A stretch of 64,000 bases of DNA from Macrostomum lignano. Its lineage: Eukaryota. The stretch covers positions 174,427-238,426 of the forward strand of contig NIVC01000852.1 of assembly GCA_002269645.1 (NCBI GenBank). The letters are read 5' to 3'. Below the pieces are notes generated by a model. It was given only the letters and a program-made list of their open reading frames with translations, had not been told where the DNA came from and did no database searches. The translations under genes and the position numbers were made by a program. This document shows, in pieces, positions 2,398-40,575 of this stretch (its first letter is position 1; the number at the start of each line of letters is the position of its first letter).

Positions 2398-3073
2398 GTG
2401 AGCGTGTGCATGACTGCCTGCCTGCGTACAGAATTGGCGCGCTTGAATGTGCTCAGAGTCAGCGGAATGAGCACAGCCCTCGTACGAACATTTATTTCAA
2501 GTTTTTCTCACCGGAGTAAAATCCAGTGCCCAGCAATCTAATTGTTATCAACGCAGAGAATCTGCTTTCTTAAGAACTGTTCCTATTGAATTCGCCTAGC
2601 ATTGCGGATTTCGTATCTACATAGCCTGCAGCAGTTGTTAAGCTTCACAATGCCTGGATTCCTAGGTCCTGTAATGACACAGTGAACCCTTGCTTTATTG
2701 TTCGAGAAGAAGTCTAGTGAATCTCTCCATTCCCTCACTCCCTCCCTTTTTTCCTATTAATTCCCTCTGAGGATTATGCTCCCATCAATCTTCTGACAAG
2801 TTCTGAAATAACTGACAAAGTTTTAAAGCACGGCTTTGAATTGCAGGAGTCCGAAGAGTTTTTTTTCAGCTTGTCTGGCCGGTACAGATCTTGCTCTGTG
2901 ACTTGACATTTTTATGGAGCTTTCGTAGCTTTGGGGAAAAGTTTTTTAGGGATAAATTAAATATAATCGTTGCCTTTGAATTTGATAGCGTTGTCGCTGT
3001 AGACTGAACTCGCTGCTGTAGTGTCTACTGATTGGCCTTCTCTGCTGGTGAATCAATTTGCTGTCCTTGCTCA

Positions 3074-3619
3074 TTACTTGTCTTCTTCTGATCTGCCCGA
3101 ACCTCCAAGCTTCTTCATGATCAGCGGGTCGAAGCGCTTCATGATCAGCGGGTCGAACCTCTTTCTCATGATCAGCGGGTCGAAGCGCTTCATGATCAGC
3201 GGGTCGAACTTCTTTCTCATGATCAGCGGGTCGAACTTCTTTCTCATTATCAGCGGGTCGAACCTCTTTCTCATGATCAGCGGGTCGAACCTCTTTCTCA
3301 TGATCAGCGGGTCGAAGCGCTTCATGATCAGCGGGTCGAACCTCTTTCTCATGATCAGCGGGTCGAAGCGCTTCATGATCAGCGGGTCGAACTTCTTTCT
3401 CATGATCAGCGGGTCGAACCTCTTTCTCATGATTAGCGGGTCGAACCTCTTTCTCATGATCAGCGGGTCGAAGCGCTTCATGATCAGTGGGTCGAACTTC
3501 TTTCTCATGATCAGCGGGTCGAACCTCTTTCTCATGATCAGCGGGTCGAACCTCTTTCTCATGATCAGCGGGTCGAAGCGGCGCTCGACTTCAGCTTGAG
3601 AGTCGGCATCCTCGATTTG
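3074..3619 (-). CDS. Prohormone coding exon 2 (peptide array)
   Basis: 24/27-nt units that differ by a whole codon, with synonymous variants (ATA/ATC, CTA/CTG, CCA/CCG). AATAAA-type signals lie downstream on the minus strand (tttatt near 2694 and 2492). Confidence 0.88.
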   Translation of the reverse strand, partial: QIEDADSQAEVERRFDPLIMRKRFDPLIMRKRFDPLIMRKKFDPLIMKRFDPLIMRKRFDPLIMRKRFDPLIMRKKFDPLIMKRFDPLIMRKRFDPLIMKRFDPLIMRKRFDPLIMRKRFDPLIMRKKFDPLIMRKKFDPLIMKRFDPLIMRKRFDPLIMKRFDPLIMKKLGGSGRSEEDK

Positions 3620-6425
3620 CTGCGGAATGAGAGAGGCGAATCAAATTTCTCTCCGAGCGCCAAGAAAAATTGAGTTAGTAAAGTAAAGTTGCTATAGAAG
3701 GACTGCCAAACTGGAATCAAGATTATGTTCTTAGCCAAGCCACCCGCTCAAGACAGATCAGGATAGTGCTGAGTGCGCGATTCGCTTTCTATAACACTCT
3801 TGGAGTTAATCAATTTTGTTTCGGAACGGCAGAAGCAATAACTCTTATTCGGGATTCTGGATTTTACCAACACACACTGCACTGACTGAGCGGCTGACTT
3901 GATGGAAGCAGCTCCCGATGACACACCGTGCGAAAAATTTTTAGAGTCTTAATTTTCTTATTTTTTAGTCTGCCTTCTTCATGCTATTAGTTCATATTAG
4001 CTGGGTAAGCTGATTGATCAGACTGAATTTTAACTGGTTAGCACTGCTGATATTCAGTTCTGTTAGCTAAGTTCAACTGTTTAGAAGCTGGCTATCAACA
4101 CTTTGCAGCACCGCTGGGATCTGCTTAATGACTTTCATGCCACTGATTTGATTAATTTGCTTTTTGACACCTTCGCCCCTCCGGCCCCCTCTGACTCCCT
4201 CTCTGACCTCCCCTCTCTAGCGGATTCCTATCTGACCTCCCCTCTCTGGCCTCCCCTCTCTAGCGGATTCCTGTCTGACCTCCCCTCTCTGACCTCCCCT
4301 CTCTGACCTCCCCTCTCTGACCTCCCCTCTCTGACCTCCCCTCTCTAGCTGTCCCGTTCTCCAACTCCGTTTCAAAATTATCCACCCACCTCTCTTTGAC
4401 CCCTGTAAATGTGCTGAACTTCAAGTTCAACATCGATACTCTCCATGTCTTTCCGAGCTCTGTGAACTGAGCTGTACAGAACGGTCACAAATGTCTATTA
4501 TCCACAATTGCCGGTGAAAAGCATTCTATTTTTGCTCATATTGTGTTGCTCTGATTGCCCGGCTTTTGCTAGATACGGGAGTTTCTTCCGAATTCTCTGC
4601 AGAAACGATTTTGTTTGTTCAGAATAGCGTCGTCTGGCAGGCAAAAAGTCGATCAGCCTAGATAAACCCGCGCCAAGGACGTCGATAAAGACCTGGACTA
4701 GAGTAAAACTTGTCCATAAATTGGATTGTTTTTTGGGGTTAAAGTCGAGAGAAGTCTGGCTTCTAGTCCAAGTGTTATGTAAAGAAGTCCTTGATACAAG
4801 CTGCATTGTTAATCTCCTGTCTGCCGTGTGTTTCCAGGGCAAACAACTGCTGAGTTTAAAGCCCCAATTACGAGTAATGACACCCCGTTTTCTTCTTCTC
4901 TACAGGTGGATTAGAGTTATACTAATCCTCCTCCTACTGCAAACCTGCGGAAGCGATTGCCGTCTATGGCAGTCAATTGGGCCATCTCACCCCTTCTCTC
5001 TCCCCTGTGTCATCTCACCCCTTCTCTCTCCCCTGTGTCATCTCACCCCTTCTCTCTCCCCTGTGCCATCTCACCCTTCCCTCTCCCCTGCGCCATCTCA
5101 CCCTTAACTCTCCCCTGTGCCATCTCACCCCTTCCCTCTCCCCTGTGCCATCTCACCCCTTCCCTCTCCCCTGTGCCATCTCACCCTTCACTTTCCCCTG
5201 TGCCATCTCACCCCTCCTCTCTCCCCTGTGCCATCTCACCCCTTCCCTCTCCCCAGTGCCATCTCACCCCTTCCCTCTCCCCTGTGCCATCTCACCCTTT
5301 ACTCTCCCCTGTGCCATCTCACCCTTTACTCTCCCCTGTGCCATCTCACCCCTTCCCTCTCCCCTGTGCCATCTCACCCTTCACTCTCCCCTGTGCCATC
5401 TCACCCCTTCTCTTTCCCCTATGCCATCTCACCCCTTTCACTCTCGCCCTCCCTCTCACTCCTGCCCTCCCTCTCGCTCTCGCCCTCCCTCTCACTCCCG
5501 CCCTCCCTCTCACTCTCGCCCTCCCTCTCACTCCCGCCCTCCCTCTCACTCTCACCCTCCCTCTCGCCCTCCCTCTCACTCCCGCCCTCCCTCTCACTCT
5601 CGCCCTCCCTCTCACTCCCGCCCTCCCTCTCACTCTCACCCTCCCTCTCGCCCTCCCTCTCACTCCCGCCCTCCCTCTCGCTCTCACCCTCCCTCTCACT
5701 CTCGCCCTCCCTCTCACTCTCGCCCTCCCTCTCACTCTCGCCCTCCCTCTCGCTCTCACCCTCCCTCTCACTCTCGCCCTCCCTCTCGCTCTCACCCTCC
5801 CTCTCGCTCTCGCCCTCCCTCTCGCTCTCGACCTCCTTCTCGCTCTCGCCCTCTCTCTCGCTCTCGCCCTCCCTCTCGCTCTCGACCTCCTTCTCGCTCT
5901 CGCCCTCCCTCTCACTCCCGCCCTCCCTCTCACTCTCGCCCTCCCTCTCACTCCCGCCCTCCCTCTCACTCTCACCCTCCCTCTCGCCCTCCCTCTCACT
6001 CCCGCCCTCCCTCTCACTCTCGCCCTCCCTCTCACTCCCGCCCTCCCTCTCACTCTCACCCTCCCTCTCGCCCTCCCTCTCACTCCCGCCCTCCCTCTCG
6101 CTCTCACCCTCCCTCTCACTCTCGCCCTCCCTCTCACTCTCGCCCTCCCTCTCACTCTCGCCCTCCCTCTCGCTCTCACCCTCCCTCTCACTCTCGCCCT
6201 CCCTCTCGCTCTCACCCTCCCTCTCGCTCTCGCCCTCCCTCTCGCTCTCGACCTCCTTCTCGCTCTCGCCCTCTCTCTCGCTCTCGCCCTCCCTCTCGCT
6301 CTCGACCTCCTTCTCGCTCTCGCCCTCCCTCTCGCTCTCGCCATTCTCACCTTGAGGCTGGCAGGTGCCACCAGACAGAGGGCGAGCACAGCCCACCAGA
6401 TGGGCAGCTTGGTGCAGTGCTTCAT
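3074..6425 (-). CDS. Neuropeptide prohormone, 2 coding exons (6425-6351, 3619-3074), 206 aa, 18 x FDPLIM
   Basis: Exon 6425-6351 encodes MKHCTKLPIWWAVLALCLVAPASLK and ends at AAG|GTGAGA (phase 0). Exon 3619-3074 follows the acceptor ctctctcattccgcag| and reads QIEDADSQAEVERR-FDPLIM-(RKR/RKK/KR-FDPLIM)x17-KKLGGSGRSEEDK, ending TAA TGA. The splice is in frame and the layout is typical of a prohormone. Confidence 0.88.
4193..4345. repeat. Short CTCTCTGACCTCCC repeat
   Basis: Tandem 14-15 bp units in the prohormone intron. Confidence 0.85.
4983..5437. repeat. About 28-bp minisatellite TGTGCCATCTCACCCCTTCCCTCTCCCC
   Basis: Tandem copies in the prohormone intron. Confidence 0.9.
5440..6340. repeat. 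18-bp pyrimidine-rich minisatellite with a 420-bp higher-order duplication
   Basis: CTCTCGCCCTCCCTCTCA units; the lines at 5521 and 5941 are identical. Confidence 0.95.
6351..6425 (-). CDS. Prohormone coding exon 1 (signal peptide)
   Basis: Basic n-region (MKHCTK), hydrophobic core (LPIWWAVLALCLV), small residues APAS, donor GTGAGA. An upstream acceptor cccatcttgcag| at 6494 implies a 5' UTR exon or trans-splice site. Confidence 0.82.
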
Positions 6426-6827
6426 GTCTCCTCAAAGCGGCAAGCAGGTTCTCCACAATGGGCTGCTCAGCTATGCAGTGGCGCGGCGCGTGTCTGCAAG
6501 ATGGGAACAAAAGCGAGCGAGTAGTTGCGTCCTAGTTTTTTTTCCTCGCCAATTAGGGTCCTAAAATTTTCCTCCCCATAAGTGTATTTAACTTCCCAAT
6601 TCCCCCTTCCCAATTAGTTCTATTCAAACTGTCGCTCCAGTAGTGCTTGAGTTGCACCCGAGTCTCGTAAGCCCGCTCTCATTGTCTGACACGCTTCTAC
6701 TCAATTTGATGAGGCAGCTCATGAATTATTCAGCAATTCCTCGCTAAATGCTGCAGCACTTTCTTTGTCTCATCATTGCAGTTTCTTTTCATGGTGCATT
6801 GTTCTGCCCAGAGCTGTCAACTGCGCC

Positions 6828-10165: not shown

Positions 10166-10779
10166 GATTAAGGGAGAATCGACTAAAACCGACTCACGAG
10201 CTGTTTTTTTCAGCTGTGCCGTAGTCTCAGTCCGAAGCGCGGTAGACCAGGCGGACAGACAGGGAGATGTGGAGCCGCAATGGCAGCCGCCAGAATGCAG
10301 ATCTCGGATAATAAGAGTTGAGAGCCTCCGCTGCACCCGGAACTGCCGCTCTGCAGCCAATGGCAGTCCCTGGCCAATAAAGACGAGGATTTGCAACCCC
10401 GCGAAACCGGCCGCCCTAATCAGCTGGATATTCAGCAGAAAATGATGCTGAACCATGGCCTGCAGTTGCAGGTCCTCGATGACCTCCAGGGCCCAATCTG
10501 CTCCTCTCAGCGCTGCCAGAAGAAGAAATCCCAATGGGAGAGCATTGCTGCCTCCTCCTCCCCCAGCGAGCATTTTTTATCCCAGTGACTAATCGTTCTT
10601 TGAGTCCTTCGAGTCCTTAGCGGTCAACCAGGCTCTTGTGCCAGTGCCAAGAATAGACCCATCGGTCCAAGCAGACATTACAGCTGCCCATCTCGTAGAA
10701 TTAGGAGCAGAAAATTCAATTGCCAGAAGTATTTCTGCTTTTAAAAGACACTTGTATCTACTTGCTTATACCAGATTCT

Positions 10780-14020: not shown

Positions 14021-17000
14021 CTGCAGTGAGACGGATAGTCTAGGCTGTAACTGTTTGGTCTCACCCTTTAACTGTGCCACTCTTAATTATTTCACGCTGA
14101 TTTTCACTCTCATGATGTCACTCTCATGATGTCAGTCTAATTATGTCACTCTCATTATGTCACTCATTATGTCACTCTCATTATGTCACTCTCATTATGT
14201 CACTCTCGTTATGCCACTCTCATTATGTCATTCTCATTATGTCACTCTCATTATGTCACTCTCATTATGTCACTCTCGTTACGCCACTCTCATTATGTCA
14301 TTCTCATTATGTCACTCTCATTATGTCACTCTCATTATGTCACTCTCATTATGTCACTCTCGTTATGCCACTCTCATTATGTCATTCTCATTATGCCACT
14401 CTTATTATGTCACTCTCATTATGTCACTCTCGTTATGCCACTCTCATTATGTCACTATCATTATGTCACTCTCATTATGTCACTCTCGTTATGCCACTCT
14501 CGTTATGTCACTATCATTATGTCACTCTCATTATGTCACTCTCGTTATGCCACTCTCGTTATGTCACTCTCATTATGTCACTCTCATTATGTTACTCATG
14601 ATGTTACTCTCATAATGTCACTCTTCATGCTGTCACTCTTCATGATGTCACTGTCATTAATGTCACTCTCATGCTGTCACTCTTCATGCTGTCACTCTTC
14701 ATGATGTCATTGTCATTGATGTCACTCTTCATGATGTCATTGTCATTGATGTCACTCTTCATGATGTCATTGTCATTGATGTCACTCTTCATGATGTCAT
14801 TGTCATTGATGTCACTCTTCATGATGTCATTGTCATTGATGTCACTCTTCATGATGTCATTGTCATTGATGTCACTCTTCATGATAGCACTCTCATTGAA
14901 CGCGAGGCAGGGCGAGTGAATGAGTGAGTCAGCGGGTTGAATTATTCTACGAGCCACATACATCCATAGTGTACAGAACACTGCCTTGCTACTGCCCTGG
15001 CTCTCACGCTTAGCCTAGTGTCATGTTTTCATTCTCATAGCTTCAAGTCTCACCTGGGCATCTTGAGCAGAAAGAAGCAGGTATAAGCCTCCGGCAGGAA
15101 GTTATCAGGCGGGGTGTACTTGTCCAATATCTGTATGACAAAGTCCCTGCCCCGCATGTCAGCCGGAGACCTGGGCAGGCGGGCGCGGCCCCACACGAAT
15201 CTGAGGAACAGGGATCGTTCCGCGTTGGAAAACTCTTCCATGACCTCCCAGAACCAGCGCATTAGCGGGCTGGACTGTTCGACGCCTTTGTAAGTGGCGA
15301 TAGACTTTAATAGAGCCACGGGAATCTCCGGGTTGCCGCACACGACGCTCTCCAACTGCTGGCTGGTGAACAGGGACAGGTAGGGCAGCGGCACTACAAG
15401 GCTCAGACCGGCTCGAATCTGAGCAGCCGCTGAGTCGAACTCGCGCAGCCGGTGCTGCACAGCCAGGCGAAGATATTCGGCCCTGTTGTCTGGTGTTATC
15501 GTAGCCGACGATGAGGCTGAAGACGATGAAGGAAGCTGGGGAGCCGGCAGTGGCAGCGGTTCTCCGCCTGTGATGCTCGTTACGGCGAATGGCAGCTCGG
15601 CGGTTGCTAAGGACGCGTCGTCCATAGTGCGAATGGCCATCAGGGAGGCCACAGTGTCCTTGTCCAAATCGGTGAGGTCGTCTAAGGTCAGCGGCTCGCC
15701 CGCGAACAGTTTCCACATGGCGTCGTGCAGGCTGAGGTTCAACGGGCTGCCTGTGCGAATTGCGATGCCCAGGAGACTGCCGACAAACCGGAGCCACTTG
15801 GGATCGGCGGCCGAATGAGGGTTTAGCACCTGGGCAGAGGGTAACCATAGCAACAATTTTTCGTGCTATTCGATTGAATAGAATTTAGCAGGTACTACGA
15901 AATCTCCTGAAGACGAACATTCCGCTTTAATAATAAGTTGTCATAACCTTTTAATGATTTTTCACCATCGTCACAGTAACTCGTACACATCCTTCCTATT
16001 TACTAATCTGCTAAGTTGTCATAGCAACCGTAGGAAAAATCGCCTTTACAGTAAAGTAGATTTGTTAAGTAATTTTTACGAATTCTCACGTAATTTCCGC
16101 GGAACTTCCACGGATTTTCCACGGAACTTCCACGGGTTTTCCATGTAATTTCCGCGAATTTTTCCTACATCTGGTATAAACACTCACCATGCAATCCTTG
16201 GCGGGCGCGGGGCACAGCAGCGGCACGGCGCCGGTGCTGAGCTCCTCGCAGATTTCGGCCACGCACTCCGAATAGCCGCCGCCGCAGTCGTCGACGGATT
16301 CGCCGACCAGTTTCACTTTCCAAACTCGTTGGGGCAGCAGCCAGTGCTCGGTCTGGGCGGACTCCATCTTGGCGGCCACCTGGGCCAGAACCGATCGGCT
16401 TGGGTCGCGCTTGGTCCGACGGGCGCTGGCACCGAGTCTTTGTTTAAAAAGCCAGATATTTGACGATATTAAGTCTTAGTTACAGATAGCATAAACTGTA
16501 AACACTATACTTAGGATAAAGTTAGCATAAAGCCACAAACCTGTTGACTTCAATAACGGGCCCGTGCTGCTTGTCCCTGACCATAGTGGCCTGGATGACC
16601 TTGCGGAATAGGGACTCCTTCACGGAGGCTAGGAGCAAGTAGCGCAGCTGGTGCATTCCAGGTGCCTGCAATAGTAAATAGCAAATTTACTCCAAAGCTT
16701 CAAAATAATAATAATAATAATTGATTACACCCGTCCTATTGGGAAGATGTGCAACCGACAGCTCAGCCGCCGCTATTGCGCGGCGCATCTGAAGGCTGCG
16801 TACGGCTTCACGGACTGGGGGGGGGGGGGTCGCCATACACACCCTCAATTACCCCAGCTAATGCTGGCACCCATTTTACAGCTGGGTGAACTGAAGCAAT
16901 GCAGAGTTAAGTGTCTTGCTCAAGGACACAAATTGGCGTGAGTCCGACACTCTAACCACTAGGCTGCAACTCCCTATAACCCCCCTTTCGTGAACGAAAG

Positions 17001-20000
17001 TACAAACGCAACAAAGTACCTGTGCACTAAAGTACACACGCCTGAAAGTACATGCTCATTAAAGTACACGCGCGTACACAGAAGAACACGTGCACTAACT
17101 AAAATCCGATAGAAATAATTAATAGAATAAAACTCAATAGACCTCTAACCTGAAAGTTAATAAGCGGCGCAGTGTAGCAGAGCAGCTCAGAGAAGAGATT
17201 CAACAGTACTAGCCGATCGCGCAGAAGAGACGGCGGCAGGCCTTGCAAAGCCGTGTACTCAACCGGCACAGACTCAGGCAGACGGCCGCCAGCTGATGAG
17301 CCGCCGTCGGCGCTAGACTTATGCGTGCTCCAGGCCAGAGTGTGCGCAGATCCGCAGGCCACCTGGTTAATCATTTTACCTTGCAGAGCGGCCACTAGGC
17401 GAGGCCGGCCAATAGACGTAGTGGTGGAATCGCCTAGTTGACCTTCGTCATTGTCGCCCCAGGTGTAAACCTCGCTCTCGGCTGTGCAGGCAACGCAGTG
17501 CAAGGAGCCGCAACAGACGGCTATGATTCGCTTGCCTTCTAGGCTAGCCACAGCCTTTGGCCGGCGAACATGCTCGGGTGGGTCCTGGGACACGTGGCCT
17601 AATCTGTGATAATCGCCTTTGCCCCAGGTGTAGACTAGGCCCGAGGATGATAGAGCCACGGAGAACTGGGAGCCGCACTCGACCTTGATGATGTCCTTGC
17701 CAGTCAGGGAGTCGATCTTCATCGGGACTCGGCAGCCTGGGATTTATTTGTTGGATAAGGTCGCTTTCACAAGCTATAACCATGATAATCACGCGCCTCT
17801 CGGTCCGGGATGAGCAACAGTTTTTTGCAAATTAGATAAATTACCTAAAACTTGGAGCTATTACTTTTACAATAGAGAAAAAATACAATTAGTTAATGGG
17901 TCCTCCTATGACTCCTGTCCTGAGAATGCTCGTATTAGTGGCTTAGCCAAAAGTGGAGGTCATGGGGTCGACTTTTTATAACTGCCAACAAAAAGGATGA
18001 TAGACTGATAGTACATGTAGCTATTTCGGCTATTTATTCAACTCAAGCTACATACTGAACAATTCTACGATTAACTATAGTATGGCTATGATGGATTGAC
18101 ACTAAATTTTGAGTGTTTTAGCAGCATTTAGCTAAGTTTTTTCTTCTTAAATTTCACCCTTCCTGCGGATTCGTGTTAACTGTTAGGCGACAGGGCCGCC
18201 AGATGTCTGTAGACTGTTTGTTGTTACGTTGTCACTGCAGCGTGTTAACTGGCTGGTTATAATAAGGCGATTTTCAATTTACAAACTTACTATGTATGCA
18301 TTATCATCAGAAATTAAGTACACAGCCTTTGATTTCTCGTTTTATATCGTAAAAATAATATTATTGATTGTTTTTTTCATTTTATTATATACCTAAACCT
18401 ATGGGTCAGTAATTTCTCAGCTCTCTCCCAGTCTAGTGTACATTTACCGGCTGTTGGGTGTATGTACATTTGTTTTGCTTATCATTCCCCACGGCCGCGA
18501 CTTTTCTCACCCTCTAACGCTCGCTGATTGGCTCTTAAAGCGTAGCTTAAACTAGCCCCCCGCTGTGCCTGCTGATAAGCTCAGAGAGAGGCTTCTATAA
18601 TGCACGATATAATACGAATTTTCTCTCCCCTTTCGTCCGACCCCCCACTCTTTTAATTGACAAAACCACGCCTTCAACTTCATGGTCATTATTATTATTA
18701 ACTTAAAGAAAGTACATTGTACTTTTATATCACAGTTATAAGGCCATATTAAGTATAAAAGTAATTTGACTGGATTGATAAAATCGATATAAAAAACTAT
18801 TACGCTCGTAGAGCAAGCGCTGTATAAAAGAAGTTTGTGTGTACAAATATGGTCAGGCAGGCGGCAGAGCAAGCCTTTTACGAATATTACTTCAGTCTCT
18901 AAGCTGATGCAGATGAATCAACTATATAAAACTGCTAAGGCTAGGGCAACATTCCCTAAACTAAACACAGTTGTACTGGATCTAATGAATATTAGTACTC
19001 CTATTTAGTATATGTGGATATATTACAGACTGAGCAGACCAGTGGCAGAGAGGCAGAAGGAAGATTCTCGAGTAGCATCGACGTTCGTAATTATAATAAG
19101 TTGAGATCGCTTTGCACAGCTGTGCAAGCCAAACCGGCTCAGGGTCCACCTCCTAACATGCTCCACTCTAAGTAGCTAGCAAGCATCCTACTGGCTAAAC
19201 AGTGGCTGCAGGTTTAATCTACTACTAAACCATGCCTGCGACGTCTTATCTCAATATATATAAGTTTATTTCTGTAGAGCAGAATAGAAATGCGCAAGAA
19301 GCGGCAGGCAGCAGAGGCAACACGACTGAGGACTGAGGAGCCTGCAAAAGTGCTGTCTCTCGTTGTTTGTTGAGGGGGGGTGGTGGTTAGGCACCATTTC
19401 ATTTGAGGGTCGTATGACAATAAAGAATTCTAGAATGAAATATGCTACAAAGACATGTACAGACAATAAACTAGGAACTATTAATAGTACCAATTTCTAT
19501 ATTCCATAAAACTCGAAAAAGTCTTTGATCATCCCAGCTACATGTATTTGGTCATTAATCCTCCCAGCTAGGTCATAGACTATTTGGTCATTAATCCTCC
19601 CAGCTAGGTCATAGACTATTTGGTCATTAATACTCCCAGCTAGGTCATAGACTATTGGTCATTAATCCTCCCAGCTAAGTCATAGACTATTTGGTCATTA
19701 ATCCTCCCAGCTAGGTCATAGACCAATTGGTCATTAATCCTCTCAGCTAGGTCATGGACTATTTGGTCATTGATCATCCCAGCCAAGTCATGTACTATTT
19801 GGTCATTAATCATCCCAGCTACATGTATTTGGTCATTGATCATCCCAGCTAGGTCATGGACTATTTGGTCATTGATCATCTCAGCCAAGTCATAGACTAT
19901 TAGGTCATAAGCTTCAGTCAAATCTCACCTTCGGAGCCGCCGCGGCCCAATTTGCCGTAGTCGCCGTCGCCCCAGGACCAGACGCAGCCGTCGCAGGTGA

Positions 20001-23000: not shown

Positions 23001-26000
23001 TGGGGAGGGTGGCAGCTGAAGGATAGGGGAGGGTGGCAGCTGAAGGATGGGAGGGTGGCAGCTGAAGGATGGGGGAGGGTGGCAGCTGAAGGATGGGGGA
23101 GGGTGGCAGCTGAAGGATAGGGGAGGGTGGCAGCTGAAGGATGGGGAGGGTGGCAGCTGAAGGATAGGGGAGGGTGGCAGCTGAAGGATGGGGAGGGTGG
23201 CAGCTGAAGGATGGGGGAGGGTGGCAGCTGAAGGATGGGGGAGGGTGGCAGCTGAAGGATGGGGGAGGGTGGCAGCTGAAGGATGGGGGAGGGTGTCAGC
23301 TGAAGGATAGGGGAGGGTGGCAGCTGAAGGATCGAAGAGGGTGGCAGCTGAAGGATCGGGGAGGGGTGGCAGCTGAAGGATCGGGGAGGGGGTGGCAGCT
23401 GAAGGATCGGGGAGGGGTGGTAGCTGAAGGATCGGGGAGGGGGTGGCAGCTGAAGGATCGGGGAGGGGGTGGCAGCTGAAGGATCGGGGAGGGGGTGGCA
23501 GCTGAAGGATCGGGGAGGGGTGGTAGCTGAAGGATCGGGGAGGGGTGGTAGCTGAAGGATCGGGGAGGGGTGGCAGCTGAAGGATCGGGGAGGGGTGGCA
23601 GCTGAAGGATCGGGGAGGGGGTGGCAGCTGAAGGATCGGGGAGGGAGGGGGAGGCAGCTAAAGGATCGGGGAGGGGGGGAGGGAGGGGGAGGCAGCTGAA
23701 GGATCGGGGAGGGGGTGGCAGCTGAAGGATCGGGGAGGGGAGGCAGCTGAAGGATCGGGGAGAGGATGGCGAGGATAAGGGATTAGGGACACGAGATAAG
23801 GGATTAGGGGCTAGATAACGGATTAAAAATGGCAGAGAACAGCCACTCTCCTCCCAAACTAACCAGCTGCTTGTCCTGCTCGAAGCCGAAGGTCTTGCAG
23901 TCGATAAATCGCTCGTCTGGTCGCCTGGCGTCGCCAATCTTCTTGCGCAATTCGTCAACAAACTCCTGCGGCAGAGACTGTTGGTGGCCTAGCAGACACT
24001 GGATAGTTCGCTGGACAAGGCAGTAGCGCCGAAACCAGGCCCACTTGGAGGCGCAGGGCGACTTATCGAGGTCGCTGTCGCAGGCTAATCCGCACAGGAC
24101 TATCAAAAACGGGCTGTGCATCAGCTGCTTGCCGGAGCGGACAGCCGTCTCTTCGAAATCGTACTGGCGAGACAGCATGTCCGGCAGGGTGCGCAGCAGC
24201 GACTGGACTGGCGATTCGCGACCCTGTCGGAGGCAGATTAGAGTTGGATTCCCGTTACTGACTGGGCAGATGGACCAGGATTCCCCATCACATCAGCAGA
24301 GGGATTCTCCATCACATTAGCAGAGGGATTCTCCATCACATCAGCAGAGGGATTCTCCATCATATCAGCAGAAGGGATTCCCCATCATACCAGTGGAAGG
24401 GATTCCCTATCATATCAGCAGAAGGGATTCCCCATCATATCAGCAGAAGGGATTCCCCATCATATCAGCAGAAGGGATTCCCCATCATATCAGCAGAAGG
24501 GATTCCCCATCATATCAGATGGATTCCCCATCACATCAGCAGAAGGGATTCCCCATCATATCAGATGGAGTCCCCATCACATCAGCAGAGGGACTCCCCA
24601 TCACATTAGCAGAGGGACTCACCATCACATCAGCAGAGGGATTCTCCATCATACCAGTGAAAGGGATTCCCCATTATATCAGTAGAAGGGATTCGCCATC
24701 ATAGAAGTATCAGTAGAGGGATTCGCCATCATATCAGCAGAAGGGAATCCCCATCATAACAGTAGAGGGATTCCCTATCTCATCAGCAAAGGGATTGCCC
24801 ATCATACCAGCAGAAGGGATTCCCCATCATATTAGTAGAAGGGATTCCCCATCATATCAGTAGAAGGGATTCCCCATCATACCAGCAGAGTGATTCCCAT
24901 CACATTAGCTGAGGGATTCCCCATTAAACCAGCAGTGGGGATTCCCCATCATACCAGCAGTGGGGATTCCCCATCATACCAGCAGTGGGGATTCCCCATC
25001 ATATCAGCATAGGGATTCCCCATCAAACGAGCAGAAGAGATTCCCAATCATACTAGAAGAAGGGATTCCCCTATGACCTAAAATATCCTCAACTACTATT
25101 CCTCTTCAAAAAACGGATCGATTGCGTAGGCCCACCTCAGCTGCTCCGGTCCGCTGCAGTCCCCGCACCAGCGCCCTGAGCATGTGCAGCGCCCACATTC
25201 GCTGATCAGCAGTTAGCGAATTCAACTGTGCGGTGGCGCCAAGAGCGGCGGCCAATCGACTAGCGGCAGTCGGCGACAGGGTGATGGCGGCCGCGGCAGC
25301 TGCCGGAATCGGTGGTACCAGGCGGCGTAGCAGACGCTGAGCCATGCGGATGCAGGGCCGCTCCAGAACGCTGGCATCGCTGAGCACCAACACGGGCGTG
25401 GACGTCGGCATCACGGGGTGCACAGTGAACCGCCAGCCCCAGCCGTTCACAGACAGGTCCGAAGTGAACTTCCAGGCCAATTCGCAGCCAGGAACTTTGA
25501 TCTCCTGCGACCAATCCGACCATTCCCGGCCGGACCGGACGGCTACAATGCGGCCGGCCCCATCTAGTATAGCCAATGGATCGTGCCGCTTCTCAGTTGA
25601 GCACTGCCGATCGAATTCGACGGTGAGCATCTCGGCGCCGGGGATGCAGACTATGCCGGAGAGGCTGCAGTCGTCCAGATATGGATGCGGGCTCTCCTGC
25701 ACTACAGGGGCCGGCCGACGGCCCTGGCCGGTGAGCTCGGAGTCGACGGCGGCCGCCTCCAGCTCGGCGATGCAGGCGTCAATCAGCAGACTGGCGACGC
25801 GTTGATTGGCGTCGGCCAGGCGTTCGAGCTTCTCGGCCAGACGGCGCGACGAGGCCGCGTTAACGGCCGGAGCTGGCGAGGTTGCCACCCGATCGCAGAT
25901 GGCCAGCTTGAGTAGGCTGAGCAGCTGGGCGATGCCGCCGCTAGTGAGCAGGCGGTGTTGCTCGGCTTCATCTTCGGGCTCAACTGCAGGCGGCGGGCTC

Positions 26001-29000
26001 TCCTCCACCGGGGTGGCCTCTAGCGAGGATTCGACTTGGGCGTGAGTTGGCGAGCCGCTGGGCAAGTCCAGTCGAATGTCGTCGATGCTGGTCAGGGCGC
26101 CGCCGTCCAGATTCTCCAGAGTCTCCGAGCGCGGAGGCGCCGGCAGCGGCGGTGGTGGCGGCGAGGGTGATATCGGAGGAGTCGTCGGTTGCTTCAGCGG
26201 CGCAGGTTCAGCAGCCAGAGCGACCTCGGCGCTGAGGCAGTCGACGGCGGCTGAGCGGGCCAGACGGAGCAGGCGAGCCCGCAGCAGGCAGGTCAGCGCC
26301 GCCCGCTTGTCGGCCAGCCGCTTGGCGCTGAGGGTCACGCGGCTAAGCGACGGTCGAGACGGTGTTGTCGTCGTCGTTGCTGTCGAGGACGACGAAGCTG
26401 CGACCGGCTTGTCGGCGGCGGCTGCGGCCGACAGCGGCTGGGGAGCTACTGAGTGATCCCAGGCGTCGCGCTCCCAGGCGTCCATGGCGAAGGTCCTGCC
26501 GAGAGGGTTGCGCTCCGCCGCGAACGGGACCGGCTCGTGCGCCGGTGCGGCAGCGGCGGCTGCAGCGGCGGCAGCGGCGGCGGCCTGGCCAAAGTCGGCC
26601 AGAGTCCAAGCGACGCTGTGCGAGCTGCCGCAGGCGACCCGGGTGACCCGGTAGCCTTCCAGGCCTTGGACAAGGCAGGGCCGGCGGTTCACCGTGGTGG
26701 AGCCGTTGCCCTGCTGGCCGTGGTCGTTGTCGCCCCAGGCGTAGACCTGGCCCTGGGACGGTAATTTATGAAGATTAAGCTGGCATTGCACATTCGGAAT
26801 AATAATAATGATATAATTGATTACACCGGTCCCAACCGACAGCTCAGCCGCAGCTGTTTGCGCGGCGCATCTGAAGGCTGCGTACGGCTGTTCAGTCCAA
26901 GGACTGGGGGGTCGCCACACACACACACGTCCTCAATTACCCCAGCTAATGCTGGCACCCATTTTACAACTGGGTGAACTCAAGTAATGATGCAGAGTTA
27001 AGTGTCTTGCTCAAGGACCCAAATTGTTCCAGTGGGGATCGAGAAGCGAACCCCCGACCTTCAAGTCGCGAGTCCGACGCTCTAAGCACTAGGCTACATG
27101 TACATTAAATAGCCTTATCGCTCCTTACCTGATCCGTGACGGCCAGACAGTGCAGAGCCCCAACGGCCACGTGAACAACTCGCTTATCGCGCAGCGCCTC
27201 AACCATGGTAGGCTTGCGCACGTGCTCGTCAGTGCCGTGGCCCAGCCGGTAATAGTCGCCCTTGCCCCAGGTCCACACTTCGCCACGGTTAGTCAGCGCC
27301 AAAGTGAACTGAGCCCCGCATTCGAGTTGTTCAACGCCACGACCGCACAACACGTCGATTCGAGCCGGCAAATTGCAGCCTTCGGAGCCGCCGCGGCCAA
27401 GTTTGCCAAAGTCACCGTCGCCCCACGACCAGACGTTGCCGTCTTCGGTTAAGGCGACGGTCTGGGCGTCCCGGCTGCCGCAGGACACCTGCGAGTGGGG
27501 GGGGGTTATAAGAAAATTCGGTAAATTGAAAAGTTCGCGCATTCAGGAACTTGCTTAGCATACTACTTACATAACTTACAAAAGTAGGCTAAAGATTTAT
27601 TTAGACTAGGAAAGGTGTGAGAGTAGACAAGGCGGTGGGACTAGACAAGGCGGTGAGACTAGACAAGGTGTGAGAGAAGACAAGGCGGTGGGACTAGACA
27701 ATGTGTGAGACTAGACAAGTTGGTGAGACTAAACAAGTTGGTGAGACTAGGCAAGGTGTGAGAGTAGACAAGGTGTGAGAGTAGACAAGGTGGTGAGAAT
27801 AGACAAGGTGGTGAGAATAGACAAGGTGTGAGACTAGACAAGGTATAAGAGTAGACAATGCGGTGAGAGTAGACAATGTGGTGAGAATAGACAAGGCGGT
27901 GAGAATAGACAAGGCGATGAGAATAGACAAGGCGGTGAGAATAGGCAAGGTGTGAGAGTAGACAAGGTGTGAGAATAGACAATGCGGTGAGAATAGACAA
28001 GGCGGTGAGAATAGACAAGGCGATGAGAATAGACAAGGCGGTGAGAATAGACAAGGCAGTGAGAATAGACAAGGTGTGAGACTAGGTAAAGGTTAGATAA
28101 ATGTTAGGCTTAGAAAAAGTGAGACTAGAAAATGTTAGACTAAGACAGAATGTGAGATTAGACAAGGTAAGAGCAGACTACAACCCAATCTGTCTTTCAC
28201 AAGCGCACCTGAACAACACGCATCGATTTAAGCGCTTCGACCCGCTTCGGCCGCATTTGAGTATCGCTATCGCCGTGACCAAGTCGGCCGTATTCGCCCA
28301 GGCCCCAGGTGAACAATTCGCCGTTGAAGCCGACAGCGGCCGAATGCGAGCTGCCACAGGCCACGTCGACAATGCGGTAGGGCTTGAGAGTCTCAATTAG
28401 GCGGGGACGATCCTACATAGACGACATTGTGGACACAAATTAGAGTTAATTTAATAGATTTTAAACATCATCAACTTTGCTATTTTTACTTGATTTTAAG
28501 TGTTTTCGATACATATCGGCTTTGAAATAATTGATTTAAGTTACTTTGACACATATCGGTCATGAACTCTACTTTATTATTTATTACTTCGATACATATC
28601 GGCTCAATTTTTTTCCTTAACTTTAAATGCTTTCGATACATATCGGCCAAAAATTTTTTCTTGATTTTAAATGTTTTCGATACATATCGGTTCAGCGTTT
28701 TTTCTCGATTTTTAAGTATATCGGTTCCGAAAATGTGGCTTTCTTAAATTAATTAAAACAGTTTAACTTACAATAAATAAAAGTATGTGGACACAAAAAA
28801 TAACCTACAATTTCTCACCTGCGGCTCGCTAACTCCGTGACCTAATTTACCATCGTCGCATTCACCCCAGCTTAAAACTTGACCGTCAACCGTCAGTGCC
28901 AGACAGTGCCGACCGCTGGAGTGGACGGCAACCTTCTTTATCTGGAAATTTATAAGTTTTAGAGACAATTTAGTGCACGAGATTTAACGATACTATGTGC

Positions 29001-38000: not shown

Positions 38001-40575
38001 ATAGAATCTCACCCCAGATACCACTTAACTCAGATATGAAAGAAAATCAGCCAAATTTAAAGAAACTACAAAAATGCACTCCTGGAGTTAAAGGTCGAAA
38101 GAGATCTCAGAGTATTAAAGGTACTCTAATTTTCAATACTTTGACCTTCCAACGCACCAGCAGGCCGACCCATTTATCGGTCACCAGCCTACGAACAAAG
38201 GCTTTGCAACAGCATAGTCGGAGGATCAGCTTCAAGCTGAACCAGCCGCCGTTGCCGCCGGCATCGCCGCCTTCGAGACACGAGGCCAGAGCGTCGTAGA
38301 CGAACGCAGCCAGACGGTCCCAGCAGCGCTGGTCCAAGCAGTCGGGCTGGCTGGCCACCCGGTGCAGCAGGCCGACACGCCACGCCGAGCAGATCCGCCG
38401 CAGGCCGCAGTCCGGATGTCTGGCCTCACTCTCAACGGCACGACGCCGACGCTCCTGTTGAAGTCGACGACGCGCGTCGGTCGATAATTTCGATTTTGAT
38501 CGGCGACGACGTCGATAGTTTTGGTGTCGACGATGTCGCCTATCGGCGACGTTGCTGGCGTCGTCGTCCAGTTTCTGTTGCCGCTGGTCGGCGCCGTCGA
38601 CAACAGCGACGACGTTCGAGACCTCGCCGTCGACCTCGTAGTCAATATCATTGTCGCTGAAATCGACACTGTCGTCAAATTGGCTAATGTCGTCGTCAAA
38701 ATCTTCGTCATCGTCATCGTCCTCCTCGGAGATCAAGGGGGGCTCGGCCAGCTTCAAATCGTATTTGCCTTCCCGGCCCATCCTGTAGGAGTTGGTGCCG
38801 CCGCTGTCCCAGTTCACCCGGATCCAGCCGTCGTCGCCTAGTTCGCCGACAATTGTGCCAACGCTGTTGCCATCGTCCTGCGGCCGGGTTTATCGGGGGA
38901 TTTATGGGTGTTCGCTTAGTCTAAGGGGTTTTCCGTCATGGTTATAGGATAGCATAGGGAAGCTGGATTCCCACTGAGTCATTCGGTCATAGGGAAGCTG
39001 GACTCCCACTGAGTCATTCGGTCATAGGGAAGCTGGATTCCCACTGAGTCATTCGGTCATAGGGAAGCTGGACTCCCACTGAGTCATTCGGTCATAGGGA
39101 AGCTGGATTCCCACTGAGTCATTCGGTCATAGGGAAGCTGGATTCCCACTGAGTCATTCGGTCATAGGAAGGCTGGATTCCCACTGAGTCATTCGGTCAT
39201 AGGAAGGCTGGATTCCCACTGAGTCATTCGGTCATAGGAAGGCTGGATTCCCACTGAGTCATTCGGTCATAGGAAGGCTGGATTCCCACTGAGTCATTCG
39301 GTCATAGGGAAGCTGGATTCCCACTGAGTCATTCGGTCATAGGGAAGCTGGATTCAAATTGAGTCATTCGGCCATAGGGAAGCTGGATTCAAATTGAGTC
39401 ATTCGGTCATAGGGAAGTTGCATTCAAATTGAGTCATTCGGTCATAGGGAAGCTGGACTCCCACTGAGTCATTCAGCCATAGGGAAGCTGGATTCAAATT
39501 GAGTCATTCGGTCATAGGGAAGTTGGATTCAAATTGAGTCATTCGGTCATAGGGAAGCTGGATTCAAATTGAGTCATTCGGTCATAGGGAAGCTGGACTC
39601 CCACTGAGTCATTCGGCCATAGGGAAGCTGGATTCAAATTGAGTCATTTGGTCATAGGGAAGTTGAATTCAAATTGAGTCATTCGGTCATAGAGAAGCTG
39701 GACTCCCACTGAGTCATTCAGCCATAGGGAAGCTGGATTCAAATCGAGTCATTCGGCCATAGGGAAGCTGGATTCAAATTGAGTCATTCGGTCATAGGGA
39801 AGCTGGATTCAAATTGAGTCATTCGGTCATAGGGAAGCTGGATTCAAATCGAGTCATTCGGCCATAGGGAAGCTGGATTCAAATTGAGTCATTCGGTCAT
39901 AGGGAAGCTGGATTCAAATCGAGTCATTCGGCCATAGGGAAGCTGGATTCAAATCGAGTCATTCGGTCATAGGGAAGCTGGATTCAAATTGAGTCATTCG
40001 GTCATAGGGAAGCTGGATTCAAATCGAGTCATTCGGTCATAGGGAAGCTGGATTCAAATTGAGTCATTCGGTCATAGGGAAGTTGGATTCCCAAATGAGG
40101 GCCGCTGGATTGTTAGTGTTCATTTGATTGATACGCAAAGGTTCCGTTGGATTCTTGACCCTTCAATGAACCGTACGCCCTTCCAGCCTTCCTAACTGTG
40201 CTTAAGTGAACTAAAGCAAGACGCCAAGCTCACCTGATGGCCCCACTTCCAGTCCTGGCCGCGCACAACCCGGGTGCCAATTTTCATTAGGGCAACCAGT
40301 TCGGGGCCGTTCAGTGGCGAGTAGGGCACATGGCGGCGACTGCGGCTCGATTCCACAACGGGGCCCATGGCCGGGGCTGATGTGGGCAGCGATCGAACTG
40401 GATCGTCTCTGCGGTGGCAAGCGCGAGCAATGGGATATGGCGAGTGGCTTGTGCTCGGTAGACAGATAGACACTAAGACAGACACTAAGACAGACAGACA
40501 GACAGACAAACAGACGGACAGGCAGACAGGCAGGCAGACAGACAGACAGACAGACAGGCAGGCAGGCAGGCAGGC

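What the first reader, a model, noticed from the sequence alone, without database searches (positions are those of the whole stretch)
3074..6425. Hidden neuropeptide prohormone encoding 18 copies of FDPLIM
Seen in sequence: what looks like one more minisatellite (about 3100-3580) is a coding exon. On the minus strand, after a good acceptor at 3620, it reads QIEDADSQAEVE-RR-[FDPLIM-(RKR|RKK|KR)]...[23 protein letters not shown], with 18 identical hexapeptides. A signal-peptide exon (MKHCTKLPIWWAVLALCLVAPASLK, 6425-6351) lies 2.7 kb upstream and splices in phase 0. The ORF track hides this because it fuses the signal exon to intronic repeat and starts the peptide exon internally. Established knowledge: signal peptide, acidic spacer and repeated short peptides between di/tribasic prohormone-convertase (PC1/3, PC2) sites define neuropeptide precursors. 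No Gly follows Met, so FDPLIM would be non-amidated. Inference: a possibly undescribed peptide signalling system with an unknown GPCR. From memory, short FDP-containing peptides occur in planarian prohormone catalogues; I cannot verify that here, so it may be a divergent family member rather than wholly new.
Basis: partly seen in the sequence, partly recalled or inferred. Interest (0 to 1): 0.92.

Follow-up and report, generated by a model that had tools for sequence, protein, structure and literature searches.

The report
Macrostomum FDP-type neuropeptide precursor gene
What looks like one more minisatellite is most likely a real two-exon gene for a secreted prohormone carrying 18 copies of the peptide FDPLIM, but it is a Macrostomum member of the already known flatworm NPP-26 / SPP-15/16 "FDPI" neuropeptide family, not a new signalling system.

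Summary
On the minus strand, 6425-6351 encodes MKHCTKLPIWWAVLALCLVAPASLK and ends at AAG|GTGAGA. After ttccgcag| at 3620, 3619-3074 encodes QIEDADSQAEVE-RR-[FDPLIM + RKR/RKK/KR]x18-KK-LGGSGRSEEDK-stop. Both exons are phase 0 and the product is 206 aa.

It is the only dibasic-punctuated peptide array in a window that is 43.5% tandem repeat. The organism is Macrostomum lignano or a very close relative.

The gene belongs to a known flatworm family:
- Schmidtea SPP-15 (FDPIQFamide x8, FDPIMFamide) and SPP-16 (QFDPIMY), both confirmed by mass spectrometry.
- Schistosoma NPP-26 (NFDPILF-OH, SYFDPILF-OH), which is neuronal, has RNAi phenotypes, and has candidate receptors SmGPCR20 and SmGPCR9.

Three relatives share the same design, a signal-peptide exon, a phase-0 intron and a peptide exon: S. 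mansoni npp-26, the Paragonimus orthologue and a M. lignano paralogue (FDPLMM x16).

The exact product is in no database searched. The nearest entry, UniProt A0A1I8HH48, is a partial model from another copy. It uses a different donor and frame and has no Met or signal peptide.

Verdict: a real gene and a new member of a known kind. Splicing, expression and processing are inferred, not shown.

The parts
6351..6425 (-). Coding part of the signal-peptide exon: MKHCTKLPIWWAVLALCLVAPASLK (25 aa, phase 0). The donor is AAG|GTGAGA at 6351/6350.
   Evidence: ATG is at 6425 with an in-frame TGA 9 nt upstream. The n-region is MKHCTK. The h-region IWWAVLALCLVA has a mean Kyte-Doolittle value of 2.53. A-P-A|S is a likely signal-peptidase site (my reading; no SignalP available). 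The length and phase match the signal-peptide exon of the paralogue (27 aa), P. westermani (26 aa) and S. mansoni npp-26 (31 aa).
6426..6470 (-). Putative 5'UTR part of the same exon (tentative). The acceptor is cactgcatag|CT at 6471/6470.
   Evidence: Mapping of UniProt model P0001 onto the window and sequence reading. No upstream ATG lies in these 45 nt. An alternative acceptor, cttgcag|A near 6494/6493, cannot be excluded.
10198..10302 (-). Putative upstream non-coding exon (tentative; its 5' end is unknown). The donor is ctc|gtgagt at 10198/10197.
   Evidence: P0001 residues 1-34 map here at 94% and 68% identity in two different frames, which fits untranslated sequence. The donor was read. 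The P0001 junction 'KKTA-AEQ' is reproduced if the last exon base is G instead of C in the other copy.
3620..6350 (-). Predicted phase-0 intron of 2,731 nt (GT...AG). It holds three minisatellites, with periods 18 (5433-6342), 28 (4981-5450) and 14/43 (4185-4349).
   Evidence: The period-18 array carries further in-frame GTGAGA donor-like sites (6216, 6180, 6108 and others), so the exact donor is inferred, not shown.
3578..3619 (-). Start of the peptide exon: acidic spacer QIEDADSQAEVE followed by the first cleavage site RR.
   Evidence: The same QIEDADSQAEVERR occurs in UniProt A0A1I8HH48.
3116..3577 (-). Array of 18 copies of FDPLIM (TTCGACCCGCTGATCATG). The separators are RKR (AGAAAGAGG), RKK (AGAAAGAAG) or KR (AAGCGC), and units are 27 or 24 nt.
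   Evidence: The three substitutions in the peptide codons are all synonymous. A profile built from non-Macrostomum family members scores the product 88.8 bits, against -2.4 +/- 26.6 for permuted-peptide controls.
3074..3115 (-). KK cleavage site, C-terminal tail LGGSGRSEEDK and the stop codon TAA.
2694..3073 (-). Probable 3'UTR (tentative). Poly(A)-signal-like hexamers are CATAAA starting at 2916 and AATAAA starting at 2699.
   Evidence: This is a motif scan only, with no transcript evidence.

Best explanation
This is a protein-coding gene of Macrostomum lignano (or a very close relative) for a multi-copy neuropeptide prohormone. It belongs to the flatworm 'FDP[I/L]xΦ' family, known as npp-26 in schistosomes and spp-15/spp-16 in planarians.

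Proposed mechanism:
1. The mRNA joins the signal-peptide exon (6425-6351) to the peptide exon (3619-3074) across a 2.7-kb, minisatellite-filled, phase-0 intron.
2. The 206-aa preproprotein enters the ER, and the signal peptide is removed, probably after A22.
3. In dense-core vesicles a PC2-type convertase cuts at the RR/RKR/RKK/KR/KK sites, and a carboxypeptidase trims the basic residues.
4. This releases 18 copies of the free-acid hexapeptide FDPLIM ([M+H]+ 735.375), an acidic N-terminal spacer and a C-terminal tail.
5. No Gly precedes the basic residues, so the peptide is not amidated, like schistosome NPP-26 peptides.
6. The peptide is then expected to act on rhodopsin-type GPCRs related to the candidate NPP-26 receptors SmGPCR20 and SmGPCR9.

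Shown here: the sequence anatomy, the family resemblance and the shared gene structure. Inferred: splicing, neuronal expression, processing and the receptor.
For: 1. Anatomy: signal peptide, acidic spacer, and 18 identical hexapeptides bounded only by K/R runs. Units are 27 or 24 nt, and the substitutions within the peptide codons are synonymous. It is the only such array in a window that is 43.5% tandem repeat.

2. Conservation across gene copies:
- UniProt A0A1I8HH48 (M. lignano) has the same spacer and FDPLIM units but a different linker order and one FDPLII unit.
- Paralogue PAA57848.1 / Mlig023240 encodes a signal peptide, an acidic spacer, KR and 16 genomic copies of FDPLMM. Only its array is still alignable to the window at DNA level, at 82-87%.
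- A third paralogue, A0A1I8FZM5, carries FDPLYGM.

3. Family:
- Smed SPP-15 has the design signal peptide, spacer, KR, FDPIQF-GKR x8, then FDPIMF. It was cloned from cDNA and its peptides were found by MS.
- SPP-16 carries QFDPIMY.
- Sm-NPP-26 peptides NFDPILF-OH, SYFDPILF-OH and others were found by LC-MS/MS as free acids.
- The Paragonimus orthologue uses RKR linkers, like the window gene.
- A profile from non-Macrostomum members scores the window product 88.8 bits, against -2.4 +/- 26.6 for 299 controls with the hexapeptide permuted. Only 4 controls score higher, and all 4 keep the FDP core.

4. Gene structure: the signal-peptide exon ends in phase 0 and one further exon holds the rest in Mlig023240 (27 aa), P. 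westermani (26 aa) and S. mansoni npp-26 (31 aa), just as proposed here (25 aa).

5. Machinery and biology in relatives:
- A PC2 homologue with a nervous-system expression pattern and an essential RNAi phenotype exists in M. lignano.
- npp-26 marks a neuron cluster in schistosome miracidia.
- spp-15 and spp-16 are treated as nervous-system-specific genes in planarians.
- SmNPP26 interacts with SmGPCR20 in a yeast two-hybrid assay.
- NFDPILF gave a Gαq BRET response with SmGPCR9.
Against: - No transcript, peptide or expression data for this locus could be consulted, so the splice junction is predicted.
- The only database model of the gene (A0A1I8HH48) uses a different donor (CTG|GTGGGC, exon end 6397) and a different frame in this exon. 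That gives a product with no Met and no hydrophobic N-terminus. If that junction were the real one, the ATG at 6425 would be out of frame with the peptides.
- Further in-frame GTGAGA donor-like sites lie inside the intronic minisatellite.
- The synonymous-substitution argument is weak on its own, because 2 of the 3 changes are also synonymous in the open antisense frame (my reading).
- Family assignment rests on a 4-residue core plus architecture and intron position, as is usual for short neuropeptides. Position 4 is Leu, not Ile, and the C-terminus is Met rather than the usual Phe/Tyr.
Confidence: 0.85

Rival explanations
1. The gene is real and makes a secreted multi-copy peptide, but it is not a neuropeptide. 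It would be expressed in a gland (prostate/seminal fluid, adhesive, rhabdite or pharyngeal glands) and released outside the body as a pheromone, seminal-fluid or defence peptide.
For: Nothing in the sequence fixes the tissue. Convertase-processed multi-copy precursors also occur in exocrine cells. Weak npp-26 signal was reported in the apical gland cell of schistosome miracidia, and in subtegumental and parenchymal cells of adults.
Against: All characterised relatives are predominantly neuronal. The peptide is a short, acidic and hydrophobic hexamer, unlike antimicrobial or adhesive products. NFDPILF gives a response on a GPCR.
Confidence: 0.08
2. The locus is transcribed but spliced as in UniProt A0A1I8HH48, with the donor at 6397. 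The FDPLIM frame would then have no start codon and no signal peptide. This copy would be a non-functional or decaying duplicate in a recently duplicated genome.
For: The only public model uses that donor. M. lignano carries several near-identical copies of many genes: A0A1I8HH48 differs from the window in linker order and is about 94% identical in the upstream exon.
Against: - The array is intact: 18 of 18 units are in frame, there is no stop, and every change inside the peptide codons is synonymous.
- The 6351 donor AAG|GTGAGA is a far better match to the consensus than CTG|GTGGGC.
- The 6351 donor gives an ATG-initiated signal peptide at the position and phase seen in three relatives.
- The A0A1I8HH48 N-terminus has no Met, is not hydrophobic (Kyte-Doolittle 0.67 against 2.53), and changes frame between the two copies. 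That looks like a predictor reading through a UTR.
Confidence: 0.05
3. The array is a non-coding minisatellite. The open frame, the dibasic pattern and the nearby 'signal peptide' are coincidences in a repeat-saturated region.
For: The window is 43.5% tandem repeat. Arrays whose period is a multiple of 3 give long ORFs in several frames, including the antisense frame of this very array (3021-3599 +).
Against: - It is the only array of 52 with dibasic punctuation.
- Indels occur only as whole codons of a basic residue.
- Unique in-frame flanks run from a good acceptor to a stop.
- The same peptide core is conserved in paralogues whose flanks have diverged beyond DNA alignment, and in planarian and trematode prohormones with MS-verified peptides.
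Confidence: 0.02

Closest known systems
Schmidtea mediterranea secreted peptide prohormone-15 (Smed-spp-15) and -16 (Smed-spp-16; UniProt E3CTL7), Collins et al. 2010, PMC2953531
   Same: - The design is a signal peptide, a short spacer and KR, followed by many tandem copies of a hexapeptide that starts directly with F-D-P after the cleavage site (SPP-15: FDPIQF x8 plus FDPIMF).
- SPP-16 (QFDPIMY) is mostly non-amidated, as predicted here.
- The peptides are MS-confirmed, and both genes are listed among nervous-system-specific genes in planarians.
   Different: - Position 4 is Ile in planarians and Leu here.
- The C-terminus is Phe/Tyr there and Met here.
- SPP-15 copies carry Gly and are amidated, whereas FDPLIM has no Gly.
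- Copy number is 9 (SPP-15) or 4 (SPP-16), against 18 here.
- Linkers are GKR/KR there, against RKR/RKK/KR here.
[quoted passage not shown]
   Same: - The peptides are non-amidated, with an FDP[I]xΦ core between dibasic sites.
- Paragonimus uses RKR linkers.
- The coding sequence has two exons, with a phase-0 intron directly after the signal peptide.
- One Met-terminated variant exists (TLFNPILM in the S. haematobium group).
   Different: - Trematode peptides have 1-2 extra N-terminal residues (N-, SY-, EH-, SH-). They are heterogeneous within a precursor and number only 5-7 copies.
- Function is known there and unknown here. It includes RNAi phenotypes in reproduction, growth and motility, and the candidate receptors SmGPCR20 and SmGPCR9.
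Macrostomum lignano paralogues: PAA57848.1 (BOX15_Mlig023240g1, FDPLMM) and UniProt A0A1I8FZM5 ('Secreted protein', FDPLYGM)
   Same: - Same species.
- Same design of signal peptide, acidic spacer, KR and array.
- Same two-exon, phase-0 structure (shown for Mlig023240).
- The repeat unit differs by one nucleotide (ATC to ATG).
   Different: - Different peptide (FDPLMM, FDPLYGM).
- Linkers are KK/KR only.
- The intron is about 330 nt, against 2.7 kb here.
- The signal peptide, spacer and tail are not alignable.
- Both paralogues are annotated only as hypothetical or secreted proteins.
Generic metazoan multi-copy neuropeptide prohormones (for example FMRFamide-type precursors)
   Same: A signal peptide, an acidic spacer, tandem identical short peptides, and di/tribasic convertase sites. 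The arrays evolve by unequal crossing-over; higher-order periods of 105 and 183 nt are seen here.
   Different: There is no amidation signal, and no sequence relation to those families.

Membership tests
Flatworm NPP-26 / SPP-15 / SPP-16 ('FDPI-type') prohormones | N-terminal signal peptide | tested here: met
   MKHCTK, then a 15-residue hydrophobic core and A-P-A|S. The maximum 12-aa Kyte-Doolittle mean is 2.53, comparable with the paralogue's 2.72. No SignalP run was possible, so the cleavage site is my reading. The result depends on the predicted splice.
Flatworm NPP-26 / SPP-15 / SPP-16 ('FDPI-type') prohormones | Several tandem copies of a 6-8 residue peptide with the core F-D-P-[I/L]-x-hydrophobic | tested here: met
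   There are 18 copies of FDPLIM. An HMM built from trematode, planarian and metatranscriptome members only scores the product 88.8 bits. The 299 permuted-hexapeptide controls average -2.4 +/- 26.6, and the 4 that score higher all keep the FDP core. A profile search starting from the family retrieves schistosomatid NPP-26, the Paragonimus orthologue and Smed SPP-16.
Flatworm NPP-26 / SPP-15 / SPP-16 ('FDPI-type') prohormones | Each copy is flanked by di/tribasic convertase sites | tested here: met
   The sites are RR, RKR x8, RKK x4, KR x5 and KK, with no non-basic linker residue. RKR linkers also occur in P. westermani.
Flatworm NPP-26 / SPP-15 / SPP-16 ('FDPI-type') prohormones | Gene structure: a signal-peptide exon ending in phase 0, with the rest of the precursor in one exon | tested here: met
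   Signal-peptide exon lengths are 31 aa in S. mansoni, 26 aa in P. westermani, 27 aa in Mlig023240 and 25 aa in the window model, all phase 0. For the window the junction is predicted, not observed.
Flatworm NPP-26 / SPP-15 / SPP-16 ('FDPI-type') prohormones | Ile at position 4 and an aromatic (F/Y) C-terminus, as in most described members | tested here: inconclusive
   The window peptide has Leu4 and Met6. All three M. lignano paralogues have Leu4. A Met-terminated member (TLFNPILM) exists in the S. haematobium group. These positions therefore vary within the family, and I do not treat them as defining.
Flatworm NPP-26 / SPP-15 / SPP-16 ('FDPI-type') prohormones | Expression in neurons | not testable with these tools
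   No M. lignano expression data were reachable. Relatives are neuronal.
Flatworm NPP-26 / SPP-15 / SPP-16 ('FDPI-type') prohormones | Mature peptides detectable by mass spectrometry | not testable with these tools
   The predicted FDPLIM [M+H]+ is 735.3746. Relatives have been verified by MS.
Flatworm NPP-26 / SPP-15 / SPP-16 ('FDPI-type') prohormones | Activates or binds the family's candidate receptors (SmGPCR20 / SmGPCR9 orthologues) | not tested
   The receptor sequences were not at hand, so no M. lignano orthologue search was done. The published evidence concerns S. mansoni only.
Neuropeptide prohormone (general class) | A processing enzyme (PC2) is present in the organism | tested here: met
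   From the literature only. M. lignano RNA815_2403.2 is a homologue of Smed-pc2, with an in situ pattern suggesting nervous-system-specific expression and a lethal RNAi phenotype (PMC4490696).

The most novel reading that the evidence does not exclude
The Leu4, Met-terminated, non-amidated peptides of Macrostomum (FDPLIM, FDPLMM, FDPLYGM) come from at least three expanded paralogous genes. They could form a functionally separate branch with its own receptor(s). Alternatively the 'FDP' family could be much older than Neoophora and reach outside flatworms. A Caenorhabditis angaria secreted precursor with 11 KR/KK-flanked FDPxx(x) peptides (CAI5456649.1) was the only other hit in the first search. 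If so, the family would be a wider protostome peptide system that has gone unrecognised.
Probability: 0.1. Interest if true: 0.5.

Novelty: new member of a known kind. Interest (0 to 1): 0.3.

Why it matters
- **Evolutionary reach.** Macrostomum lignano is a transgenic, regenerating flatworm model from an early-branching rhabditophoran lineage (my own knowledge). An intact, highly amplified FDP-type precursor there, plus two paralogues, places the NPP-26/SPP-15/16 family at or near the base of Rhabditophora.
- **A free-living test system.** In schistosomes this peptide family is being studied as a drug-target pathway, through SmGPCR20/SmGPCR9 and effects on reproduction and motility. Macrostomum offers a tractable free-living system in which to study it.
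- **Annotation lesson.** In a genome where nearly half the sequence is minisatellite, a tandem array can be a gene. Existing models of this family in M. lignano are wrong or collapsed: one has the wrong donor and frame, and another has 5 copies annotated against 16 in the genome.
- **Limit.** It does not open a new kind of signalling system.

Tried and rejected
- **Literature searches.** A full-text search for 'FDPLIM' gave 0 papers. 'KRFDP' gave only irrelevant hits. FDPLMM and related strings found only the two schistosome papers.
- **Papers not held.** McVeigh et al. 2009 and Koziol et al. 2016, the papers most likely to list M. lignano orthologues, are not held. I therefore cannot exclude that a Macrostomum npp-26 was already listed there.
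- **Database look-ups.** The look-up of encoding contigs on the UniProt model found nothing. Exact look-up of the 206-aa product and of the 162-aa internal ORF found neither in the collection.
- **Exhaustive HMMER search with exon 2.** It gave 217 hits, but most are unrelated repeat proteins matched through periodicity (for example the SGDPAIRR, SADPLIRW and ADPVVEKK arrays). Only about 7 are true relatives.
- **Synonymous-substitution test.** It is real, but it separates the two strands poorly, because the antisense frame shares third positions. I did not lean on it.
- **C. angaria FDP precursor.** It scores only 1.4 bits against the flatworm profile, so I do not count it as a family member.
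- **RNA genes.** Rfam and tRNA scans of the whole window found nothing.
- **Other ORFs.** The antisense ORF 3021-3599 (+) and the Arg-rich read-through ORF 5346-6425 (-) were considered and rejected as repeat artefacts. They lack an ATG or signal-peptide logic, their 'linkers' are non-conservative, and they have no relatives.


Full report
**1. The observation**

- Positions 6425-6351 encode MKHCTKLPIWWAVLALCLVAPASLK and end at a consensus donor, CTCAAG|GTGAGA.
- Positions 3619-3074 follow a pyrimidine-rich acceptor, ctctcattccgcag|. They encode QIEDADSQAEVE-RR, then 18 copies of FDPLIM, then KK-LGGSGRSEEDK and a stop. The separators are RKR (8), RKK (4) or KR (5).
- The exons are 75 and 546 nt, so the junction is phase 0. 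The product is 206 aa.
- The 18-nt peptide unit occurs 18 times, against 0 expected in shuffles.
One ORF runs the signal exon into the intronic minisatellite (5346-6425). Another starts at the first internal Met of the array (3074-3562).

**2. Coding sequence or just another minisatellite?**

The window is extraordinarily repeat-rich, with 52 tandem arrays covering 43.5% of it. An open frame across an array means little by itself, and the antisense frame of this array is also open. Several features set this array apart.
- Units are only 27 or 24 nt long. The length difference is exactly one basic codon.
- Every linker residue is K or R.
- The three substitutions inside the peptide codons (CCG>CCA, CTG>CTA, ATC>ATA) are all synonymous. 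The chance of this is 0.0085. Two of the three would also be silent in the antisense frame, so I give this little weight.
- The array is embedded in unique, in-frame sequence running from a good acceptor to a stop.
- In a six-frame screen of the whole window for identical short peptides between runs of at least 2 basic residues, FDPLIM x18 is the only case. The runner-up has 4 copies.

**3. Organism and other copies**

The first protein search returned two hits. One is UniProt A0A1I8HH48 from Macrostomum lignano. The other is a Caenorhabditis angaria secreted protein.

A0A1I8HH48 contains the identical QIEDADSQAEVERR spacer and FDPLIM units. Its linker order differs and it has one FDPLII unit. 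Its upstream parts map to the window at 6471-6397 (100% identity) and about 10302-10199 (94%). The window is therefore M. lignano or a very close relative, and A0A1I8HH48 is another copy or allele of this gene.

An exhaustive HMMER search was dominated by unrelated periodic proteins, but it also found two M. lignano paralogues.
- PAA57848.1 (BOX15_Mlig023240g1, 'hypothetical protein') has a signal peptide, an acidic spacer, KR and FDPLMM-KK repeats.
- A0A1I8FZM5 ('Secreted protein') carries FDPLYGM-KR repeats.

**4. The splice model**

It leaves the exon at CTG|GTGGGC (6397) in the +1 frame, which gives ...AEQPIVENLLAALRRHEALHQAAHL|QIEDADS. I consider that model wrong for four reasons.
- It has no Met anywhere upstream of the repeats.
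- Its N-terminus is not hydrophobic (12-aa Kyte-Doolittle maximum 0.67, against 2.53 for the ATG frame).
- Its upstream exon maps to the window in two different frames, as expected for a UTR read through by a gene predictor.
- Its donor is a poorer match to the consensus than AAG|GTGAGA.

The comparative evidence is stronger. In all three relatives below, the first exon ends in phase 0 and one further exon holds the rest of the precursor.
- The paralogue locus (L001, NIVC01002440.1) has a 27-aa signal-peptide exon with donor GAG|GTGCGT. A roughly 330-nt intron follows, and the second exon holds the spacer, 16 copies of FDPLMM and the tail.
- S. mansoni npp-26 has a 31-aa signal-peptide exon ending ...IVNA, with donor GCT|GTAAGT and a 6.2-kb intron.
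- The Paragonimus westermani orthologue has a 26-aa first exon ending GAA|gtgagt.

Two caveats remain. The junction is still a prediction, and the intronic 18-nt minisatellite offers further in-frame GTGAGA sites.

The A0A1I8HH48 mapping also suggests an upstream non-coding exon ending at 10198 (ctc|gtgagt), spliced to 6470 (catag|CT). This is tentative.

**5. What family it is**

- Collins et al. 2010 (PMC2953531) describe Smed-spp-15. Its layout is a signal peptide, a spacer and KR, then eight copies of FDPIQF-GKR, then FDPIMF-GR. It was cloned from cDNA, and FDPIQFamide and FDPIMFamide were detected by MS. The same paper describes Smed-spp-16 (QFDPIMY, mostly non-amidated). The authors aligned spp-15 with Schistosoma npp-26 (SYFDPILF, NFDPILF, EHFDPIIY and others).
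- Sm-NPP-26 peptides were later seen by LC-MS/MS as free acids (PMC9495596).
- The gene marks a neuron cluster in the miracidium (PMC11349301).
- It interacts with SmGPCR20 in a yeast two-hybrid assay. Combined Smgpcr20/Smnpp26 RNAi reduces egg production, female growth and ovary development (PMC10783048).
- NFDPILF gave a Gαq BRET response with SmGPCR9 (PMC13367911).

A profile search from an alignment of the relatives retrieved schistosomatid NPP-26 orthologues, the Paragonimus orthologue (SHFDPIMF with RKR linkers, as here) and Smed SPP-16.

As a controlled membership test I built an HMM from the non-Macrostomum members only.
- It scores the window product 88.8 bits.
- The 299 controls with the same architecture but a permuted hexapeptide average -2.4 +/- 26.6 bits.
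- The only four controls that score higher keep the FDP core: FDPIML, FDPILM, LFDPIM and IFDPLM.
- The C. angaria protein scores 1.4 bits, so I do not count it as a member.

**6. Mechanism**

The proposed path runs from signal-peptide cleavage to receptor activation.
- The signal peptide is removed, most likely after A-P-A.
- The proprotein is sorted to the regulated secretory pathway.
- A PC2-type convertase cuts at the basic sites. A PC2 homologue with a nervous-system expression pattern and an essential RNAi phenotype is documented in M. lignano (PMC4490696).
- A carboxypeptidase trims the basic residues.
- This releases 18 copies of FDPLIM as a free acid, since no Gly is present for amidation. 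That matches schistosome NPP-26 and Smed SPP-16.
- The receptor is expected to be a rhodopsin-type GPCR related to SmGPCR20/SmGPCR9.

The sequence anatomy, the family resemblance and the gene structure are shown here. Everything downstream of transcription is inference by homology.

**7. Novelty**

The kind of system is known. The specific gene appears undescribed.
- The 206-aa product is not in the 15-billion-protein collection.
- No held paper prints FDPLIM or FDPLMM.
- The existing database models of this family in M. lignano are unnamed, partial, collapsed or mis-framed.
- I could not read Koziol et al. 2016 or McVeigh et al. 2009, which may list Macrostomum orthologues.

I therefore rate it a new member of a known kind, with modest interest. 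It extends the FDP family to Macrostomorpha. It shows a lineage-specific Leu4/Met-terminal variant with three paralogues and high copy number. It also flags a systematic annotation problem in a minisatellite-rich genome.

**8. Context**

The rest of the minus strand, from about 15050 to at least 38817, encodes a HERC2-like giant E3 ligase with HECT, RCC1, Cul7 and MIB_HERC2 domains. Its introns hold most of the other minisatellites. No Rfam family or tRNA is present in the window.

Noticed in passing
window 15050-38817 (minus strand): Exons of a HERC2-like giant E3 ubiquitin ligase. The domains are HECT at 15050-15856, RCC1 repeats at 17099-17722 and 25106-26926, Cul7 in 34943-37171, and MIB_HERC2 in 38107-38817. 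Its 3' end lies about 4.7 kb upstream of the putative first exon of the peptide gene.
   Followed up: partly
whole window: There are 52 tandem-repeat arrays covering 43.5% of the 64 kb, 30 of them at least 300 bp long, with periods from 4 to 54 nt. Most lie in introns of the HERC2-like gene and of the peptide gene. Many give long spurious ORFs in several frames.
   Followed up: partly
window 5433-6342 (minus strand; intron of the peptide gene): The 18-nt minisatellite that starts 9 nt after the predicted donor carries many GTGAGA donor-like sites, several of them in frame with the peptide exon (6216, 6180, 6108 and others). In principle these could give alternative, Arg-rich insertions after the signal peptide.
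   Followed up: no
UniProt A0A1I8HH48 (P0001), mapped to window 10302-10199, 6471-6397 and 3619 onward: The public model of another copy of this gene is partial. It uses a different donor and frame, has no Met, and is named 'PSCyt2 domain-containing protein'. That name has no support in the sequence seen here.
   Followed up: yes
L001 10001-10872 (NIVC01002440.1, M. lignano GCA_002269645.1): The genomic locus of paralogue Mlig023240 encodes 16 copies of FDPLMM, but the GenBank protein PAA57848.1 has only 5. The annotated model skips or collapses about 11 repeat units.
   Followed up: partly
P0002 (CAI5456649.1, Caenorhabditis angaria): A nematode secreted precursor carries 11 KR/KK-flanked peptides that start with FDP (FDPYA, FDPLS, FDPMFD, FDPFS and others). 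It matched the window protein but scores only 1.4 bits against the flatworm family profile. It could be convergence or a very distant relative.
   Followed up: partly
L002 46-606 (JGI sample 3300030603, contig Ga0210253_10362022, 904 bp): An intron-less environmental contig, probably a transcript, encodes a signal peptide, a spacer, 9 copies of YFDPIMY and one of YFDPILY. This is an unidentified organism with a family member closest to Smed SPP-16.
   Followed up: no
window 58001-60000: GC content drops sharply to 0.28, against about 0.5 for the rest of the window.
   Followed up: no
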